DNA of 63,861 bases, counting the filler, from Hyphochytrium catenoides (taxonomy: Eukaryota; Protista; Hyphochytriomycota): NCBI GenBank assembly GCA_900088475.1. It is 8 parts of 8 records of this genome, joined end to end, with 100 filler letters (N's around TTAATTAATTAA, not from the genome) between each part and the next. Parts side by side here need not be neighbours in the genome. Positions count along the whole stretch, not along the records: positions 42,749 to 52,380 come from FLMG01003133.1; 7 more parts are not named here. One strand, given 5' to 3'. The position numbers and the translations under genes are program-made. How positions within the stretch are numbered: the stretch's first letter is position 1; every line of letters starts with the position of its first letter. Positions 42,749 through 52,380 of the stretch are shown here, piece by piece. Below the pieces are notes generated by a model. It saw nothing but the letters and a program-made list of their open reading frames with translations. It made no database searches and had not been told where the DNA came from.

Positions 42749-42865
42749 TCACTTCTTCTCCCCAACACCGCGCGGCAGAGAGACAGTGTCATTGTTGAGC
42801 TTTCCTCGTCTACGACTTGTGTCTCTCTTTTACAGCTCGTGTTTCTCTTGTCTTCCAACGCTGGT

Positions 42866-42962
42866 ATGGGAATGACAAGCAAGATCAACCGCATCGGCTT
42901 CATCGGATCTGGAAGGGTGGCGGAGAGTATTGCCAGGGTCCTGACCAGTATGTGAACTCCCT

Positions 42963-43017
<55 letters not shown>

Positions 43018-43191
43018 CATGCGATCTTTCTTTGGCTTTCCCCTCTCTCCACTCTCCCTCTCTTCTATATCCCTCAAGATCTTTCCCTTTCCCCGCTCTC
43101 CCTCTTCCTCTCCCATCCCCACGTGGATCCAACATCCTCTCCCTTCCCATGGCCACACCCTCTGACTTCTCCCCTTCTCTTTCTCTCTCTC

Positions 43192-43223
<32 letters not shown>

Positions 43224-44892
43224 CCTTATCCTGCAGAGACAGTGCGGCCCAAGAGAGAGTTTGACTATCGTCGTCAGAAGCTTGTCTCTAATCTTTTAGC
43301 CTCTGATCCTTCTCCTGAGCGCCGCGCTCTCTTCAACTCTTTGGGCTTTTCTACAACGACGAACAATGCAGATGTCCTGGAAGCCAGCGACCTTGTCTTT
43401 CTCACGATTAGGCCTTCAGAGACGCACGCCGTCATTGATACACTTAACGTAAGAGAGAGAAAGAGAGAGAGAGAGAGGAAGAAGAGTTTACTTGTCCGGG
43501 CTGACTATCTTTTTCTGCTTGTATGTCCTCCTTCTTTCTTTCTTGGCTTGCTTCAGTTTCTCTCTCTATTTTCTCATCTTCTCTCCCTCGGTCTCGCGCC
43601 TCTCGTCCTGTGTGTCAAGCCTTTATTCTCTATCCTTGTCAACCTTTTGATCGTAAAGCTGTCTCACAAACACGGTATCTCTCTCTCTCTTCTTTCTCTC
43701 TCTCTTCTTCCCTTTCTCTTTTCCTCTTTCTTCTTTACAGCGGCTACCCAGAGATAACAAGCTGCTGGTCTCGGTCGTCGGTGGCGTCCCTTGCGGCGTG
43801 CTGGAGAAGTTCCTAAGCAATAACAACGCTAGAGTCCTCCAGTTGATCCCTTCTCCCTCTCTCTCTTCAACCTCTTCTCTCTCTCTCTCGTCAACCTCTT
43901 CTCTCTCTCCTTCTCTTCCTTCTTTCTTGGATGGCGACAAGGAGAGACTTAAAGCCAAGCTAGCGGTTGGCAGCCATGTTCGAGAGGAAGAGCTGCAGGA
44001 TCTTCTCTCTCTCATGGACAGCTCTCTAGAGATTGAACTCCAATCAGAGAAAGAAGTCGAGACTCTCCCGCAATCTTTTGGTCTTGTTCTCAACTCATTG
44101 AAGAAAATCTATGGACAGCTCACTGATACCTCAGCCCAAGGCATTCAGCGGTATGTCCTAGGAGAAGAGATTGGACGAGGAAGATTCGGCGTGGTGTACA
44201 ACGGGATGGGACCTGAAGGAGAAGTCCTGGCTGTCAAGAAGGTAGAGAAAGACGTGGCTGACGATGTGGTCAATATTGAGGACGTTAGGAGAGAGGGCGA
44301 GATCCTCTCTCTTCTCTCGCAGCAGGAGAGAGTACTGAAGCTCTTTGACGTGGTAGAAGACGAAAAGGCGATGTATGTCATCACAGAGTACATGGAAGGT
44401 GGCAATCTCTTTGAGAGACTCAGAGAGAAAGGGAGCTTCTCCGAGGAAGAGACGAAGACTCTCATTCGAGGCTTGGTCGAGACAATCAGTGAAATGCATG
44501 AGAAGAACGTCGTTCATCGCGATCTCAAGCCTGAGAATATTCTGATGGTCTCGAAGGACAGACATGACCTAAACTTTGTCTTGGCAGACTTTGGACTGGC
44601 CAAGCAGCTGCCGCATGATGGCGCTGAGTTCTCCGATCACTGTGGTTCTACNNNNNNNNNNNNNNNNNNNNNNNNNNNNNNNNNNNNNNNNNNNNNNNNN
44701 NNNNNNNNNNNNNNNTGGACCTTCAACCGCCAGACGTGGGCTGAGATATCTGAGGATGCCAAGAAGTTTATCCACGCGGCGCTGGTTGTCAATCCTCAGC
44801 GCCGCGCCACTGTGGACCAGCTGAAGGAGCATGAGTGGCTGCGAGAGAGGGCTGAGGAGCATCCTGAGCCGATGAAAGCTTTGGCTGTTTGA
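42866..44892 (+). CDS. Fusion protein: pyrroline-5-carboxylate-reductase-like NAD(P)-binding domain + CaMK-group Ser/Thr kinase (3 exons; N gap in kinase C-lobe)
   Basis: Exon 1 RIGFIGSGRVAESIA. Exon 2 ASDPSPER..TTNNADVLEASDLVFLTIRP. Exon 3 KLLVSVVGGVP..RVLQLIP continues in frame into IGRGRFGVV, AVK, HRDLKPEN, DFG and ISEDAK..HEW. Confidence 0.85.
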
Positions 44893-45786
44893 GCTACAAG
44901 CACCTTCCCGTTCCTTGTCAACTCGTCTCTATGGTTTGTTCGTTGCTCCATGCATTTTTGTCTTCGTCCTGCTCTCTTTGTCCCGACCGCGTCCAGCCCA
45001 TAGCCCTTGCAGGGTCTCATTTTTAAACAAATAAAGGAAACTAGTCTTTCAGCGTTCTATTCTGCTGTGGGCGCAGTGCTGTCGTCAATGCAGAGAGAAA
45101 GCGAGAGAGAGAGATGCAAGGCTTAAGTGCAAGAGCCAAAGGATGACTGGATTAGCGTCAACGTTATGATGTTCGGGTTATGCTGGTGGAGGGGCATGGC
45201 AGTTGGGAACAAGGATCTCCAATCTCCCTCTTATCTCCTTCCCCTTGCCAGATTCCCTTCCCTTAGAAAGAAGCAATCCTCACCACCCTCTCTAAAGGCA
45301 CGACCGAGGGCACGAGAGAGATGAAGAGAAAGCGAAGGCGGGCAAGATGGCGAGGGAAAGAAAGAGAGACATCGTAGATAGATGGGTCAGATGGATAGGG
45401 CAAATAGTGTGTCATGTTAGAGTTTTGAGGAGGAGTAAAGAGAGAGAGAAAAGACACCAGGAGAAGGAACGCCGGAAAGTGGAGGGTTGGGGTGGGGGTG
45501 GGAGAAGAGAGAGAAGGAGAGAGAGAGAGAAAAGAGAGAGAGAGAGAAAAGAGTGACCAGCATAAGAGGCCAAGGCCCAAAATGGATTCAAATCATTGAT
45601 GTTGAGTGTGGATTACTATCTTACTGACTGTATGTCTCGCGATGAGCGCTATGTACAAGAGACCCGTCCTCTTCTAACTCCTCTTCTCTTTAATCTCTTC
45701 AAAGCCAAAAACGAAGACAAGGGCGAGAGAGAGAAGGAACGGGGCCTGCCTAGGTTATGGCTCTTTCACAAAGGCAGGACAGAGGC

Positions 45787-47733
45787 TCAAGCCTCCCTGT
45801 CCGCGGGTCTCTCTAACAACGTATAGCCCTCCTCATCTTCCTCTGCAAGCTCCAGGTCTTCATCCTCTCCTTCCAGTTCCAAGAGCTCAATATCTTCCTC
45901 TCTCTCGCTCTCAGCAGTCTCCCTCTTGGGCTTCTCAATCATAGAAGCATGAAGGCCTTCTGTCAGAGCTTCAGGGAGAGAGAGAGACTCTACATCATCG
46001 GCCAGGATGTAGTCATAGAGCATCTCCTCTGAGAGAACACCTTCCTCTTCCTCTGATGCAAGAGAGAGACCTCCTTTCTTCCGGAAAAGGTCAGTGATGT
46101 TCTTGCAGTCCCTTGCGAGGAACTCCAAGGCCCGTGGATGCGAGCGAGGATCCACAGCCTGCCCAAAGTCAATGATCCAGCACTTCTTCTCGTGATAGAG
46201 GATGTTATAGCCGCTGAGATCGGCGTGCACCAAGTGTGCGTACTGATACAGAGCGCGCATTTGATTTGCAATCTAGACAGAGTGAGAAAGAGATCGTTAG
46301 CGCACAGTTGTTCAGACCTGTTGACATGCCTCTCCGTCTCCTATTCCTTCTCTCTCTCGTCTCAAGAGATCTTGCCATTGTCTTTTGCATTGCGTTTTCT
46401 TCTTCCCCTCTCTTACCTCATAGTAGGCACTCTGCCACCTGGACTTTGAGAGCTCTGCGAGCCTTAACTGAGGAGCAGGGTGCCCATCTTTGCCTAAGAA
46501 TGACATCACAATCACGTGTTTCCTTCTATAAATGGGCGTCGGAACAGCGAGACCAGCCCGATGAGCTCTCCTCAGGTTGGCATCTTCTTTCTGCGCCCAC
46601 GTCTTGATCTGGTCGGTGATGGAAGCCTTAGAGTAGCTACCGCCATAGCGATGATCTCCATCTACATAGTCGCCTCTGTTCCTAAAGTCTGAGAGCGTGG
46701 TCCTGAAGATTTTCACGGCATAATCCACCTCTGGCCCATTGATATCTATATCTTCGAGCTTCAGAAAGCCTCCGTCAGTGAGGCGGTGCTCTACGCCTCT
46801 CCCCTGGTAGATATTCGCCTCTTTCCCTGTCGCCACGCAGCCGTCTAACTCATTGAGAACGCCAGCGTTGACTAACTTCATCAGCATAATCCTAGTAACG
46901 CGGTCCAGCACCGTGTCTGTCGTCGCTCTTTGAGCTGTCTCCACTCTCCCTGTCGTCTTTATTCCTTTAGCGCTGTCTTTCTTCAGCTCTCTTCGAAGAG
47001 CATTGGCTGCCCGGTTGGGAAGAACCACGTCTCCTATAATAATGTCATGCTCCCGCTCCACGCCCTTTGCGTTTCTCCTGCCACAGACCTCAAGATCGTG
47101 CTTGCTGATCACTTTGCCCTCTTCGTTTCGATAAAGGCCACCACGCATGCGACCTCTGCGCGCCGCCGCGGGTCTGTCTGCTCCATCGTCATCGGCAAAA
47201 GCTTCAGCAGCATCTGTGAGATGCTGCAGGCGTTCCATCTCAGGAGTGCGATGCTTGTCATTGTTCAGCGGATCGTCGTAGTAGGCAATGCGCACTTTCT
47301 GAGAAGTGCCTTGCCGATAGCGGAGTATCTTCTGTCTCTCTTCATATTCTGATCGCTCTTGGGCTTGAAGATGCAGCGCCAACGCCAGATCTGCGTCTCC
47401 ATCGTGAACTAAAGCTTCTCCTTTCTCCATGGAAGGGGCTCCACTCTCTTCTGAAGAAGGTCCAGATGATGAGCCAGCAGCAGCAACAACAGCTGGAGGA
47501 GTAACAGATGCAGTCGGAAGAGAGACCGATGACGCATTCTTCCCGGCAAGCTCCATCTCTTGGATCTGCAGGGCAAGCGCTAGGTCTAGGTCTTGGCTAT
47601 CCACGCCGCTCTCAAAGTAGACAGGATCCATCACTGGTGCCGCCTCTTCCGTCTCAAACTGCGCGCTGTAGCTGACTCCCACCGGCGCATCGAAGCGCTT
47701 CCACTGTGTCTTCTTCCGCGCCTTGGTTGCCAT
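45787..47733 (-). CDS. RIOK3: RIO atypical kinase, RIO3-like
   Basis: ATGKEANIY, YAVKIFRT..FRNRGDYVDGDHR, LVHADLSGYNILY and IIDFGQAV. The N-extension has DLALAL.LQ repeats and SKHDLEVCGRRN. One intron at ~46278-46417. Confidence 0.85.
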
Positions 47734-47938
47734 CTCGTCCAAGCTTCTCGCTAACTTTCTCACAGTCCTAGTTCGACTCTGTCTGTGGATACCTGGCCCC
47801 AGTGGCTAGAGACCCGTCCTGCTCTGTCGCAGGAGGAGGGAAGAAGAATGAATGACAAGGAAGAGAACGGTCACCTTCGTTTTTCCCTCTCATCTCTTCT
47901 CCTCGACGGAAGCTGGGAGACAAACTTGGAAACGTTAG

Positions 47939-48027
<89 letters not shown>

Positions 48028-48438
48028 GTGGACACGCACTCTCTCTCTCCGTCTCCTATCTCACCCCAATGCAAATTGTTCTGAGGTCCCTAGCTCCAAG
48101 TAGGAAATAGGAAGGGGCCTCGTGAAAGATCCCACTTTACCATCGAAGGTGACCGAAGAGAGAGAGAGAGAGAGAGAGAGAGGAAGGAAAGAGAAAGAAA
48201 GAGAGAGGATGACACAAGAAGCTGGTGAAACACAAAGCCAGAGAGTAGGAAGAGACAGAGATGGAGGAACAAAGAAGTTGAGAGACAGAGAAAGAAAGAG
48301 AGGTCAAGAGATGAGTATGAGGATGAAGTCAGGAAGGAGAGCGAGAGCTAGAACGAGAGAGAGACAGAGAGAGAGAGACAGATAGAGAGAGAGAGAGACA
48401 GAGAGAGAGAGACAGAGACACAGAGAGAGAGACAGAGA

Positions 48439-48470
<32 letters not shown>

Positions 48471-49715
48471 AGACGGCTGGAAGGAGATAAAGAGAAGAGA
48501 GAGAGGACGAAGTAAGGAGGCAGACAAAGTATGACAGAGAAAGAGGGAGATGGCAAAGAGAGAGAGAAGGGAAGAGAGACAGAGAGCAGAAGACAGCGAA
48601 AGTGTGAGAGAACTAGATAGTCAATGCGGCTAACGTTCAGACGTATTTCTTTCGTTCTATATACTACTCTACAATGAGGAATTGCCCGGGCGGTTAATGT
48701 TTAGTCGCAGTGGGGATTGGGAGTGGTACCGTGCCGTAAATTCCCAGAAGTTTCGGCACTGACATCACAGCAAAAACAAATATCACCTAGAGTTATCAGT
48801 TATCTTCCAATTGATACCAGTAATCTGATTCCTGAAGCATGTTGCGGTAATCGCCCATTACCAGCACTTAGTTACCTTCGAAACTCCTCTATCCGTGATG
48901 AAATTGCTCTTATCGGGAATAAAGGGACATGGTCCTCAGTACTGTATCTGTACATGTTTTCAGATCTTCGTCTGGCAGAAAAATCTGCAGCTTCATAGTT
49001 TATATCCTCGAGTTACAAAGCTTCAAAAAGAAGCTCCAGAAAGCTTATAGCCTATTGTGGGCTCTGGAAGGTTGAACGAATAGACGATGGAGCATGTTTG
49101 ACGTGCCAGCAACGAGTGATATAGTGGTTCTAGATGAGCTTTTACCGCTTGCAGTTTAAAGGTTGGCTTCAGATACTGCTCGTCTTACTTCGTTGTTAAG
49201 GGCTTAGGGCACAGATCCCATGCGATATGGAGAATGCGTTGATGCTTGGCATGCTTGCTAGCTTACGATGGCTGCGAGTCCAAGCTTAAAACAAGATTCG
49301 CTCCTTAAATCAAAGCCTTCAAGCTGCAGAGACGATAGAACAAGGGCCCATAGCCCTTGGGGACATAGTCACCTGAGAAGATAAAATCTCTATCTCAATC
49401 TCACGATCGATCCCTTGGCCGTCTCATGTGAACTAAGCTGCACCGGGATGCTCCCAGCTGCGCCCCACGACCGACATTGGCCTTCTCTTCTATCAAAAAC
49501 AGATGACTTCCCCTTTCTTGTTTAGCCCCTCGACTTGTTGGCATCCTCCTCCACCACGTCACGTCTGCTTTCTTATTTAGCTCTTCGACAAGGGATGGAG
49601 GCTCTAAGTCATCGCTGTTCTCTATGTGGTGGTCTTGGGCTCCCATTGAGACAAAGCTATACAGGTTCTCAGGATCTTTTCAATGCCGCTGCGTCTTCCA
49701 TGATCTCTACTCTAT

Positions 49716-52380
49716 TCATAGGCCGAGTGCGCTCTTTCTTATCGCTCCCACAGATTGCTTTCTCAGCTTTCGCTCCAATGGCACTGGCGGCAGCCCTAAC
49801 CGCTTCCCAATGCGATCCCAATAGTCATACTGTCTGGGGCCTAGAGTCTAGGAAAAGAGGGAGGGAGAAGAGAGAGAAACATTCGGAGGAGGAGGACAAA
49901 GGTCAATGCGGTAAGCGAAGTCCAGCTCAACCAATCAGGCAACCGTGACGTACCATTCGGTCTTTCTCGAGCTCCACATAGCCATCTTGCACTTCATTCT
50001 CCTCTTTCTCCATTTCTTCCTGCACATCGTAAAGGAAAGAGAGAGAGATGTGGAGCAGGCAAGGCAGAGAGAAATGAGAGGTGCAATAACTGAGGGATGA
50101 GGGACGCGGACAATGACTGAGCCGACAGCGTAAGAGGGGAGTACTCGTACACCGCCGGAGACGTGTGAAAGTAGAGCTACGTTAAAAAAGCGGCGACATG
50201 GGAAGCTTTTATCCTCCTTACCCGAGATGGCAGAGGGATCTGCCCTGAGTAGATCTTAGCAATCCACTGTGCCTGCAGTTCAAAAAGAGGAAACGGATCC
50301 ACCTTGAGCGGCAGGCCAATGAAGGCAAGAGTGGGATCTTCTCTATAGAAGACATAGTCATATAAATGTGCTACGCCTTTTCCCTCCTCTCCGACAAGAC
50401 GTCGTTGGAGCTCTGAGTCTGAGAGAAAGGGGAAGTCATAAAGATAACCTGTAGCCAGGACGATAGCGTCGACGTCTACTTCTTATGTTGGGAAAGAGAG
50501 ACAATGTGGTCAGAATCTATAGGGAGGCCCGTGCCAATAAGAAGAGAGGGAGAGAATGAACAGCGAGATCTCGACAACAATGGAATGCAGAGCAGGAAGA
50601 GTGAGAGGTTGACGAACAAAAGAGAGTGGGAGCAATGAATAGCACGACCAACAGAAAAGAGAGAACGACAACGAGAGAGAGAGAGAGAGAGAGAGTGACA
50701 CTCCAAGTAAGAACGATCCAGACGAACTATATAGGAAGAAGCAAGGCCTTCTCACCTTCAGTGCCATCTTCAAAGGTCACCTTCCGTCCTTTCACATCTG
50801 CGATCGCAGGTCTCTTCATCACTCGTGCTCTTTCTGTTGCTCTCTCTTTTGAGGTCAGACCCAAACTGTCGACACTCTCTCCTATGTCACCCATTGAGTT
50901 GGGATCCTTGAGAGAAATAACCGTGCGCCTTGCCTCTCCACATAGTTCTCGAGAAATGTCCACCCCAGATGACCCTCCGCCCACAACTATAACAGACTAA
51001 CGGGGAAGAAAGAGGTACGAGTGGTGAGATGCAGGCCCAAAAAAGAGAGAGAAAGAGTGTAAGAGCAAGAGCCTCAGAGATGAGAAACAACTACGACTGG
51101 CAGAGAAAGAAAGAAAGGAGGAGATAGGAAGAAATGCTAAGGTACGACGCGAGAGGAGATGGGAAACATAACGGACGAAATGATTGAGAAGAGCACAGAG
51201 AGGAGAGAGGATCGTGCGAGACAGAGTGAAGGTGCGCTCACTTGATCGCGGAAGGGTTTAGGGCTCCGATAGTGATTGACATGAAGGACGCGGCCTGAGA
51301 AGGAGGAAAACCAGCAGAAACAGAGGATATGCGAAGGGTCAGTTAAGGAGAGAGATTTTCTCTGTCTCGCTCTCTCCACAGATGAGCAGGGCGCGAGGCT
51401 AGACGCGCGCATGTCGAGGAAAGGCGAGAGGCGAAGAAGAGTCCACATGAAAGAGACGGCACCCCCTGATATAGAGAGAGAGCAGGCGATAGAGACAGGC
51501 AGAGAGAAAGAGAGAGAGAGAGAGAGNNNNNNNNNNNNNNNNNNNNNNNNNNNNNNNNNNNNNNNNNNNNNNNNNNNNNNNNAAAGAGAGAGAGAGAGAG
51601 AGAAAGAGAGGGGGAGAGAGGGAAGAGAGAGAGAGAGAGAATAAGAGAATGTGTGCCCAAAACCTGGGAAGGAGTCCAGGCCCGGAATGTGTGGAATGTA
51701 TGGCTTATAATAGTGGCCGTTGCACACCACCACGGCGTCAAACCGCTCCGTCACTTCCTTTGCCACAGAAGAGAGACGTCCAAGTCAGAGTAAGAAAGAA
51801 TAAGAGAGAGAGAGGGAGAGCAAGGGGTAGCACCTCTTTTAGGGAGAGGAGAGATAGCAAAGAAGAAGAGGTAAAGAGAGCGAAGGAGCGAGAGACCGAG
51901 AGAGACTTTGGAGAAAAGAGAGAGGGAACGAGAGAGAGAACGAGAGAAAAAAGAAAGAGGAGTGCGAGAAGCTGGACAGAGAGAGACACAGGAAGAGAGA
52001 TAGAGAGAGGGAAGAGACCGACGAGGGGCAGAAAGGAGAGAGAGAAGAAGAGGAGAACAGAGAGGTAGAGACAAACGAACAGAGGGAGCGAGAGAAGAAA
52101 TAGAGAGAGAAAGCATTAAAAAAAAGAGACACGAAGAAAGTGCTCCAATGGAGAGAGACAAGAAAAGAAGCTTTAAGTCAGGACTTTCTTACCTTTTCTC
52201 CGCAGAGAACCCGGACCAGCCATCTTCCTCTCCTTTTCTCTTCCTCTTCTTCCCTCTCTCCGTCTTCTCTCTCTCTCCCTCCAAGTCTCTTCACCTCTAC
52301 CACTGTGCATCCAAACCTGATCATCTCCTCTAATCTAAAGGCCTTGGCGTACGCCTCCAGGTAGCGCAGAACCTCGTGAT
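49716..52380 (-). CDS. Flavin-containing monooxygenase (5'-truncated by contig end)
   Basis: FDAVVVCNGHY, FPG|RVLHVNHYR (FxGxxxHxxxY), VVGGGSSGVDI, DAIVLATGYLYDFPFL and LAFIGLP..PFPLFELQAQWIA. Confidence 0.9.

What the first reader, a model, noticed from the sequence alone, without database searches (positions are those of the whole stretch)
42866..44892. P5C-reductase-like Rossmann domain fused to a CaMK-type kinase: candidate NAD(P)H-sensing kinase
Seen: the junction lies inside one exon (43741-44892), so it does not depend on a splicing guess. The P5CR N-domain (IGFIGSG, DLVFLTIRP, LLVSVVGGV) is present, but the P5CR helical dimerisation domain and SGSGPAY motif appear to be replaced by a kinase with intact catalytic motifs. 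I do not know this architecture. Inference: a non-catalytic dinucleotide-binding module may regulate the kinase according to redox or proline status.
Basis: partly seen in the sequence, partly recalled or inferred. Interest (0 to 1): 0.75.

Follow-up and report, generated by a model that had tools for sequence, protein, structure and literature searches.

The report
Degenerate P5C-reductase domain fused to kinase
In an unidentified eukaryote's draft genome, one open three-exon reading frame joins a decayed proline-synthesis-enzyme (P5C reductase) nucleotide-binding domain to an apparently active CaMK-like protein kinase; I found this combination nowhere else, but no transcript, read or orthologue confirms it.

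Summary
Exon 1 (42866-42947), exon 2 (43237-43448) and the start of exon 3 (43741-43848) align in order to positions 1-117 of P5C reductase. Pfam PF03807 matches exon 2 above its curated cut-off, and 0 of 3000 shuffles reach the real score for any of the three pieces. The same exon-3 frame runs without a stop into a Pkinase domain (E 8e-40). The kinase has an intact glycine loop, catalytic Lys, HRD and DFG motifs.

The P5CR catalytic and dimerisation domain (GSGPAY, SPxGTT) is absent. The invariant RxMPN motif has already decayed to QLIPS, so the module is a pseudo-enzyme at best.

The assembly gap (44652-44715) lies inside the kinase. Both flanks map in order onto the same kinases, and about 53 residues (about 160 nt) are hidden behind 64 N. 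Frame across the gap cannot be known.

None of the 277 nearest kinases collected from the two large protein searches carries a P5CR-like region. Two metagenome scans and four paper searches also found nothing.

Weak points:
- No sequencing run was listed, so there is no RNA or read evidence.
- No orthologue exists, and the organism is unknown.
- P5CR similarity beyond the CT-rich stretch is only marginal, so a misjoin there is not excluded.

NAD(P)H sensing is inference only.

The parts
42866..42947 (+). Exon 1. ATG start and beta1 with the glycine fingerprint (RIGFIGSGRVAESIARVL) of the P5CR-like Rossmann domain. It ends in phase 1 before donor GTATGT at 42948. The frame stays open upstream to the piece's edge at 42749, so the start codon is not proven.
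   Evidence: PF03807 positions 1-18; 0 of 3000 shuffles
42948..43236 (+). Intron 1 (289 nt), GTATGT...CTGCAG, holding (CT)n microsatellites. This is inferred from sequence alone, without RNA evidence.
43237..43448 (+). Exon 2. Central part of the P5CR-like Rossmann domain (SDPSPERRALFNSLGF...DLVFLTIRP). The conserved VKP is TIRP here.
   Evidence: (PF03807 positions 27-79, 23.5 bits)
43449..43740 (+). Intron 2 (292 nt), GTAAGA...TTTACAG, phase 0. Profile positions run on across it (79 to 85), which supports this splice.
43741..43848 (+). Start of exon 3. P5CR-like beta5-alphaE-beta6 (KLLVSVVGGV...ARVLQLIPS). The invariant RxMPN motif has decayed to QLIPS.
   Evidence: profile 85-117; 0 of 3000; hhalign E 6.5e-4
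43850..43926 (+). CT-rich stretch, a 24-nt unit in 2.8 copies. It reads in frame as a Ser/Leu/Pro-rich insertion at the place of P5CR profile positions 118-128. It is open in all three + frames, so it is not itself evidence of coding, and it is the one place where a misjoin could hide.
43927..44151 (+). Linker of 75 codons between the CT-rich stretch and the kinase. It is open only in the kinase frame and has kinase-like GC by codon position. It shows marginal, in-order similarity to P5CR positions 129-162. The only in-frame ATG here is at 44014.
44152..44651 (+). Kinase domain from the glycine loop to the activation loop: GRGRFGVV, AVKK, HRDLKPEN, DFG. Asp stands at the place of the CaMK1 activation-loop Thr.
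   Evidence: (Pkinase 1-159, E 8e-40)
44652..44715 (.). Assembly gap of 64 N. It hides about 53 residues (about 160 nt) of the kinase: the rest of the activation loop, APE and subdomain IX. Frame and continuity are not knowable from the sequence.
44716..44892 (+). Kinase subdomains X-XI, a 16-residue tail and the TGA stop (44890-44892). There is no calmodulin-binding or EF-hand region.
   Evidence: (Pkinase 223-263)
45030..45035 (+). AATAAA, 138 nt after the stop. Possible polyadenylation signal.
   Evidence: read directly

Best explanation
This is one real gene of three exons that encodes a protein of about 520 residues.

Its first ~135 residues are a diverged P5C-reductase Rossmann domain that keeps the dinucleotide fingerprint. 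The domain has lost the RxMPN motif and the whole helical dimerisation and P5C-binding domain, so it cannot be a P5C reductase. A Ser/Leu/Pro-rich loop and a 75-residue linker follow. The linker may be the decayed end of the same domain.

Next comes a CaMK-like Ser/Thr kinase with intact catalytic motifs. It has an acidic residue at the activation-loop phosphorylation site and no C-terminal autoinhibitory, calmodulin-binding or EF-hand region.

Shown: the two homologies, their order, the unbroken frame, and the coding-like composition of the linker.

Inferred: the kinase has none of the usual CaMK or CDPK control elements, so the N-terminal pseudo-enzyme is its regulatory or targeting module. 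The most likely mechanism is binding of NAD(P)(H) and coupling of kinase activity or partner choice to nucleotide occupancy. This would resemble other kinases that use a dead enzyme domain as a ligand sensor.
For: P5CR homology:
- Pfam, NCBIfam and solved-structure matches.
- In-order P5CR alignment of exon 1, exon 2 and the exon-3 start, with 0 of 3000 shuffles reaching each score.
- hhalign E 6.5e-4 for the exon-3 start.
- Protein-language-model neighbours of exon 2 are all PF03807. Those of the exon-3 N-terminus are P5CR_dimer or DUF2520, at lead level only.

Gene structure:
- Canonical GT-AG introns with compatible phases, and profile positions that continue across both splices.
- The 75-codon linker has no stop in the kinase frame and 2-5 stops in each of the other five frames. 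Its GC by codon position (0.64/0.31/0.51) is like the kinase's (0.62/0.29/0.59) and unlike the introns'.
- The frame is the same on both sides of the CT-rich stretch.

Pseudo-enzyme state:
- The invariant P5CR residues R and N of RxMPN are already lost upstream of that stretch. This fits a pseudo-enzyme, not a normal proC gene misjoined to a kinase gene.

Kinase:
- The catalytic motifs are intact and Asp stands at the T-loop site.
- Only 16 residues follow the kinase domain.
Against: - There is no transcript or read evidence. No sequencing run was listed.
- No orthologue or other protein with this architecture was found anywhere, so there is no conservation evidence that the fusion is under selection.
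- P5CR similarity after the CT-rich stretch is marginal: 71-74 of 3000 shuffles reach the score, 17-18 of 3000 at the expected place, and hhalign gives E 0.16. Homology therefore does not bridge the one repeat where a draft assembly could misjoin.
- The scaffold is a short draft piece with two gaps.
- The kinase's activation segment is unread.
- An in-frame ATG at 44014 could start a kinase-only product.
- Nucleotide binding is untested, and K68R, G17V and the loss of RxMPN may impair it.
Confidence: 0.5

Rival explanations
1. Assembly chimera. A short-read draft assembler joined a degenerate P5CR-like locus to an unrelated kinase locus through the shared CT-rich low-complexity stretch at 43850-43926, and the frame is kept by chance.
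For: CT/GA microsatellites are very abundant in this piece. The piece is a short scaffold with two N gaps. Firm P5CR homology stops just before the stretch and is only marginal after it. No orthologue shows the same join.
Against: - The stretch is a structured 24-nt unit in 2.8 copies, only 77 nt long, not a long pure microsatellite.
- The frame is the same on both sides.
- The 75 codons after it are open only in that frame and are not part of the kinase domain or of any kinase N-terminus found.
- Their best, though weak, similarity is to the next P5CR segment in the right order, by two methods.
- The P5CR-like part is already non-canonical upstream of the stretch.
Confidence: 0.15
2. Gene-model artefact. 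The kinase is expressed on its own from the in-frame ATG at 44014, or from an unseen upstream exon spliced into exon 3. The P5CR-like exons are then a decaying proC pseudogene or an untranslated leader that happens to stay open.
For: An in-frame ATG sits at 44014, 46 codons before the kinase domain. The P5CR-like part has lost its catalytic motifs. There are no RNA data.
Against: - About 133 P5CR-like codons in three exons have no stop or frameshift, and their canonical splice sites have matching phases.
- The core Rossmann positions are kept.
- There is no stop between the P5CR-like part and the kinase in 137 codons.
- Coding-type composition runs through the linker.
- Exon 3 begins right after a good acceptor with a pyrimidine tract.
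Confidence: 0.15
3. Real fusion, but the N-domain does not sense nucleotides. It is a structural, oligomerisation, docking or localisation module, or a decaying N-terminal extension of a constitutively active kinase.
For: The conserved P5CR positions G17, K68, R113 and N117 are changed, and a 25-residue low-complexity insertion sits in the loop after beta6. No orthologues exist to show constraint. Asp at the T-loop site suggests a kinase that is active by default.
Against: The G-x-G-x-x-A fingerprint, P69, S91 and G95 are kept and the other changes are mostly conservative. The P5CR dimerisation domain, the usual oligomerisation surface, is the part that is missing.
Confidence: 0.2

Closest known systems
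Pyrroline-5-carboxylate reductase (ProC / PYCR1; Pfam PF03807 + PF14748)
   Same: The N-terminal Rossmann domain is homologous and in the same order through about position 117 of the enzyme. The glycine fingerprint, the (V/I)(K/R)P strand and the S-x-x-x-G strand are kept.
   Different: RxMPN has decayed to QLIPS. The whole C-terminal helical domain that makes the dimer and binds P5C/proline (GSGPAY, SPxGTT) is absent and replaced by a kinase. It is not a P5C reductase.
CaMK-group kinases: CaMK1 of oomycetes and fungi, plant CDPK, CRK and PPCK
   Same: These are the best matches of the kinase domain, at 38-43% identity. The catalytic motifs are shared, and there is an acidic residue at the T-loop position, as in the CDPK aligned here.
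   Different: There is no autoinhibitory or calmodulin-binding segment and no EF hands, only 16 residues after the domain. None of the 277 nearest kinases has a P5CR-like N-terminus.
STEAP metalloreductases and F420H2:NADP+ oxidoreductase (from my own knowledge, not tested here)
   Same: These are precedents for the PF03807-type domain serving as a portable NADPH-binding module joined to an unrelated domain.
   Different: In those proteins the module stays catalytic (hydride or electron donor), and the partner is a membrane haem domain, not a kinase.
GCN2 (kinase with a HisRS-like pseudo-enzyme sensor) and the NADPH-sensing Rossmann proteins NmrA and HSCARG (from my own knowledge, functional analogy only)
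   Same: The logic is the same: a dead metabolic-enzyme or Rossmann domain used as a ligand sensor that controls signalling.
   Different: There is no sequence relationship, and sensing by this domain is not shown.

Membership tests
P5C reductase (ProC/PYCR) | N-terminal Rossmann domain with the G-x-G-x-x-(A/G) dinucleotide fingerprint, homologous to PF03807 | tested here: met
   PF03807 on exons 1 and 2. In-order alignment to 13 proC proteins with 0 of 3000 shuffles reaching the score. G6 and G8 are kept.
P5C reductase (ProC/PYCR) | Invariant RxMPN(T)P motif after beta6 | tested here: not met
   R, P and N are invariant in 13 of 13 proC proteins. Here the sequence is Q-L-I-P-S: only P is kept.
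P5C reductase (ProC/PYCR) | C-terminal helical dimerisation and substrate domain (PF14748) with GSGPAY and SPxGTT | tested here: not met
   No PF14748 or proC match on exon 3. None of the 22 conserved columns has a counterpart. A kinase domain occupies the place.
Eukaryotic protein kinase (PF00069) | Glycine loop, VAIK lysine, alphaC glutamate, HRDLKxxN and DFG | tested here: met
   Pkinase E 8e-40. All are invariant columns in the alignment with six kinases.
Eukaryotic protein kinase (PF00069) | APE motif and subdomains VIII-IX | not testable with these tools
   They lie in the assembly gap 44652-44715. About 53 residues are missing.
CaMK / CDPK group | Closest similarity to CaMK-group catalytic domains | tested here: met
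   The best hits are CaMK1, CDPK, CRK and PPCK at 38-43% identity. No tree was built.
CaMK / CDPK group | C-terminal autoinhibitory and calmodulin-binding segment, or EF-hand domain | tested here: not met
   Only 16 residues follow the kinase domain, and there is no EF-hand match.

The most novel reading that the evidence does not exclude
This is a previously undescribed type of metabolic-state kinase. A pseudo-P5C-reductase Rossmann domain binds NADPH/NADP+ (or NADH). Through that binding it switches a CaMK-like kinase that has no calcium-related control elements, linking redox or proline-pathway status directly to protein phosphorylation.
Probability: 0.15. Interest if true: 0.8.

Novelty: new variant of a known kind. 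Interest (0 to 1): 0.45.

Why it matters
If the fusion is real and expressed, it is a new domain combination: a dead amino-acid-biosynthesis enzyme reused as the only accessory domain of a protein kinase. That would give a directly testable candidate for a kinase that reads NAD(P)H, a link usually made indirectly. It would also add to the few cases, such as GCN2, where pseudo-enzymes act as kinase sensors. If it is an assembly or gene-model artefact, it is only a caution about CT-rich draft assemblies.

Tried and rejected
Searches for relatives:
- Word-index protein search with the exon-3 N-terminus alone found no hit.
- The same search with all of exon 3 found only generic CaMK or CDPK kinases that cover the kinase half. 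None has PF03807.
- Exhaustive phmmer on 1.84 billion representatives: every one of the best 150 matches the query only from about residue 87-140 onward, and many are multi-kinase proteins.
- Local phmmer and hmmsearch of the exon pieces, E. coli ProC and my P5CR profile against all 277 collected kinases found nothing.
- Two metagenome scans found one unrelated kinase at 42% identity.
- Four paper searches for the architecture found nothing relevant.

Searches that failed or were closed:
- Sequencing-run search listed none, so read laying could not be used.
- To identify the organism I searched with the neighbouring RIO kinase ORF, which gave no scored hit, probably swamped by low-complexity words. 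Exact-product look-ups were not on record. Names of the nearest kinase clusters (Stygamoeba, Pythium, Pylaiella, plants) were not informative.
- AlphaFold2 of exon 3 alone without an alignment gave pLDDT 38.7 and was unusable, so no fold search was run.

Other checks:
- An intron in place of the CT-rich stretch was considered. The only GT there (GTTGAT at 43842, GTCAAC at 43891) does not resemble the GTAAGA and GTATGT donors of this piece, and the simplest acceptors break the frame. I did not adopt it, but cannot exclude it without RNA.
- tRNA and Rfam scans of the piece found nothing.

Full report
**What is in the sequence.**
The piece (42749-52380) is eukaryotic DNA of about 50% GC with short GT-AG introns and very many (CT)n/(GA)n microsatellites. 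On the + strand I read three exons.

- Exon 1 is 42866-42947. The ATG starts MGMTSKINRIGFIGSGRVAESIARVLT, and the exon ends in phase 1 before donor GTATGT.
- Exon 2 is 43237-43448, after the acceptor CTGCAG. It ends in phase 0 before donor GTAAGA.
- Exon 3 is 43741-44892, after TTTACAG. It ends with TGA at 44890.

In frame, the sequence stays open from the ATG back to the piece's edge, so the start codon is plausible but not proven.

**The gap, tested first.**
The 64 N at 44652-44715 lie inside the kinase domain. The left flank ends at Pkinase profile position 159 (…DFGLAKQLPHDGAEFSDHCGS). The right flank resumes at position 223 and runs to the end of the domain at 263.

I projected both flanks onto the 277 nearest kinases:
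- 161 of them match both flanks.
- Where both flanks are matched, the spacing clusters at 51-57 residues. The median number of residues between them is 53, and 102 of 194 pairs give exactly 53.
- The alignment shows the same.

Both sides therefore belong to one kinase gene in the right order and strand, and about 160 nt (or more, if an intron lies there) are hidden behind 64 N. The frame 'kept' across the N is arbitrary. The activation-loop end, APE and subdomain IX cannot be judged.

**The P5CR-like part.**
- Pfam PF03807 matches exon 1 (positions 1-18, E 0.006) and exon 2 (positions 27-79 of 94, E 8.9e-5, 23.5 bits, above the 21.6 cut-off).
- NCBIfam proC matches exon 2 (E 0.0036).
- The best solved-structure matches of exon 2 are P5C reductases of a plant, bacteria and human, though weakly.
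- The protein-language-model neighbours of exon 2 are all PF03807 clusters.

Pfam has no model for the middle of the enzyme. I therefore built a profile from 13 proC proteins: E. coli plus 12 plasmid-borne genes from 6 bacterial phyla and one archaeon. The pieces align to it in order:

| Piece | Profile positions |
|---|---|
| Exon 1 | 1-18 |
| Exon 2 | 25-79 |
| First 36 codons of exon 3 | 85-117 |
| Stretch after the CT-rich region | 129-162 |

For the first three pieces, no shuffle out of 3000 reaches the real score, and hhalign gives E 6.5e-4 for the exon-3 start. For the fourth, the signal is marginal. 71-74 of 3000 shuffles reach the score, 17-18 of 3000 at the expected place, and hhalign gives E 0.16 in the same register.

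Of the 14 highly conserved N-domain columns up to position 95:
- 6 are identical (I5, G6, G8, P69, S91, G95).
- 7 are conservatively changed (for example K68R, A94G).
- 1 is not (G17V).

The invariant RxMPN motif reads QLIPS. None of the 22 conserved columns of the C-terminal domain (GSGPAY, SPxGTT and others) has a counterpart. The module is P5CR-derived and cannot be a P5C reductase.

**The junction.**
Exon 3 is one uninterrupted frame from 43741 to the gap. It holds four parts in this order:
- 36 P5CR-like codons.
- A CT-rich stretch (43850-43926, a 24-nt unit in 2.8 copies) that reads as a Ser/Leu/Pro-rich insertion where P5CR has positions 118-128.
- A 75-codon linker.
- The kinase, from 44152.

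The CT-rich stretch is open in all three + frames and so proves nothing. The linker has no stop in the kinase frame and 2-5 stops in each of the other five frames. Its GC by codon position (0.64/0.31/0.51) matches the kinase's (0.62/0.29/0.59) and not the introns'. The frame is the same on both sides of the CT-rich stretch.

If the acceptor at 43740 is used and no further intron exists, a ribosome that reads the P5CR-like codons must read on into the kinase. There is no stop before 44890.

**The kinase.**
Pkinase scores E 8e-40. The glycine loop, AVK lysine, alphaC glutamate, HRDLKPEN and DFG are present and are invariant columns in the alignment. The best relatives are CaMK1 of oomycetes and fungi and plant CDPK, CRK and PPCK, at 38-43% identity over the kinase half only.

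At the place of the CaMK1 activation-loop threonine stands Asp; the CDPK aligned here has Glu at that place. Only 16 residues follow the domain, with no calmodulin-binding segment and no EF hands. The usual controls of this kinase group are therefore absent, and the P5CR-like N-terminus is the only accessory region.

**Is the architecture known?**
- The word-index search found no orthologue and no hit carrying PF03807.
- The exhaustive search of 1.84 billion representatives returned kinases that match only from about residue 87-140 of the query onward.
- Local searches of all 277 collected proteins with the exon pieces, E. coli ProC and the P5CR profile found nothing.
- Metagenome scans and paper searches found nothing.

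These searches would see close orthologues. They cannot see a distant protein with the same two Pfam domains, so 'never seen' is not shown. A direct domain-architecture query is still needed.

**What could not be done.**
- No sequencing run was listed, so neither the DNA join nor the mRNA could be checked.
- The organism was not identified.
- Everything was done exon by exon, by reference.
- Exon 3 alone folded poorly (pLDDT 38.7).

**Verdict.**
The best reading (about 0.5) is a real gene for a pseudo-P5CR Rossmann domain fused to a CaMK-like kinase. The N-domain is the likely regulatory module, possibly by NAD(P)(H) binding; that part is inference.

Three rivals remain open:
- A misjoin at the CT-rich stretch (0.15).
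- A kinase-only transcript with a decaying proC relic upstream (0.15).
- A real fusion whose N-domain does not sense nucleotides (0.2).

The loss of RxMPN upstream of the CT-rich stretch argues against a simple join of a normal proC gene to a kinase gene. The intact splice sites and frames of about 133 P5CR-like codons argue against a plain pseudogene.

It is a new combination of known domains. Interest is moderate until a read or a transcript spans 43700-44200.

Noticed in passing
window 45790-47733, minus strand: A RIO1-type atypical kinase gene in two exons, about 47733-46412 and 46267-45790, with intron donor GTAAGAG. Pfam RIO1 matches positions 12-115 and 117-180. It has a long acidic and low-complexity N-terminus and is convergent with the fusion gene.
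   Followed up: partly
window 50150-52380, minus strand: A flavin-monooxygenase-like gene in several small exons. Pfam FMO-like matches 51590-51766, and a GxGxSG motif ORF lies at 50727-50984. It is interrupted by a second assembly gap at 51527-51582 and cut by the piece's edge.
   Followed up: partly
window 42950-43740 and 47930-48580, 51450-52130: Pyrimidine microsatellites follow the transcribed strand. (CT)n is found in the introns of the + strand gene. (GA)n on the + strand, which is CT on the sense strand, is found around and within the minus-strand genes. GC and AT skew flip accordingly.
   Followed up: no
window 48600-49500: A stretch free of repeats with lower GC (0.42). It has no family match, tRNA or Rfam hit, and it is unexplained.
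   Followed up: partly
window 42749-42865: The frame of the start codon stays open to the piece's edge, and a possible acceptor (TTTTACAG) ends at 42836. An upstream exon beyond the piece cannot be excluded.
   Followed up: no
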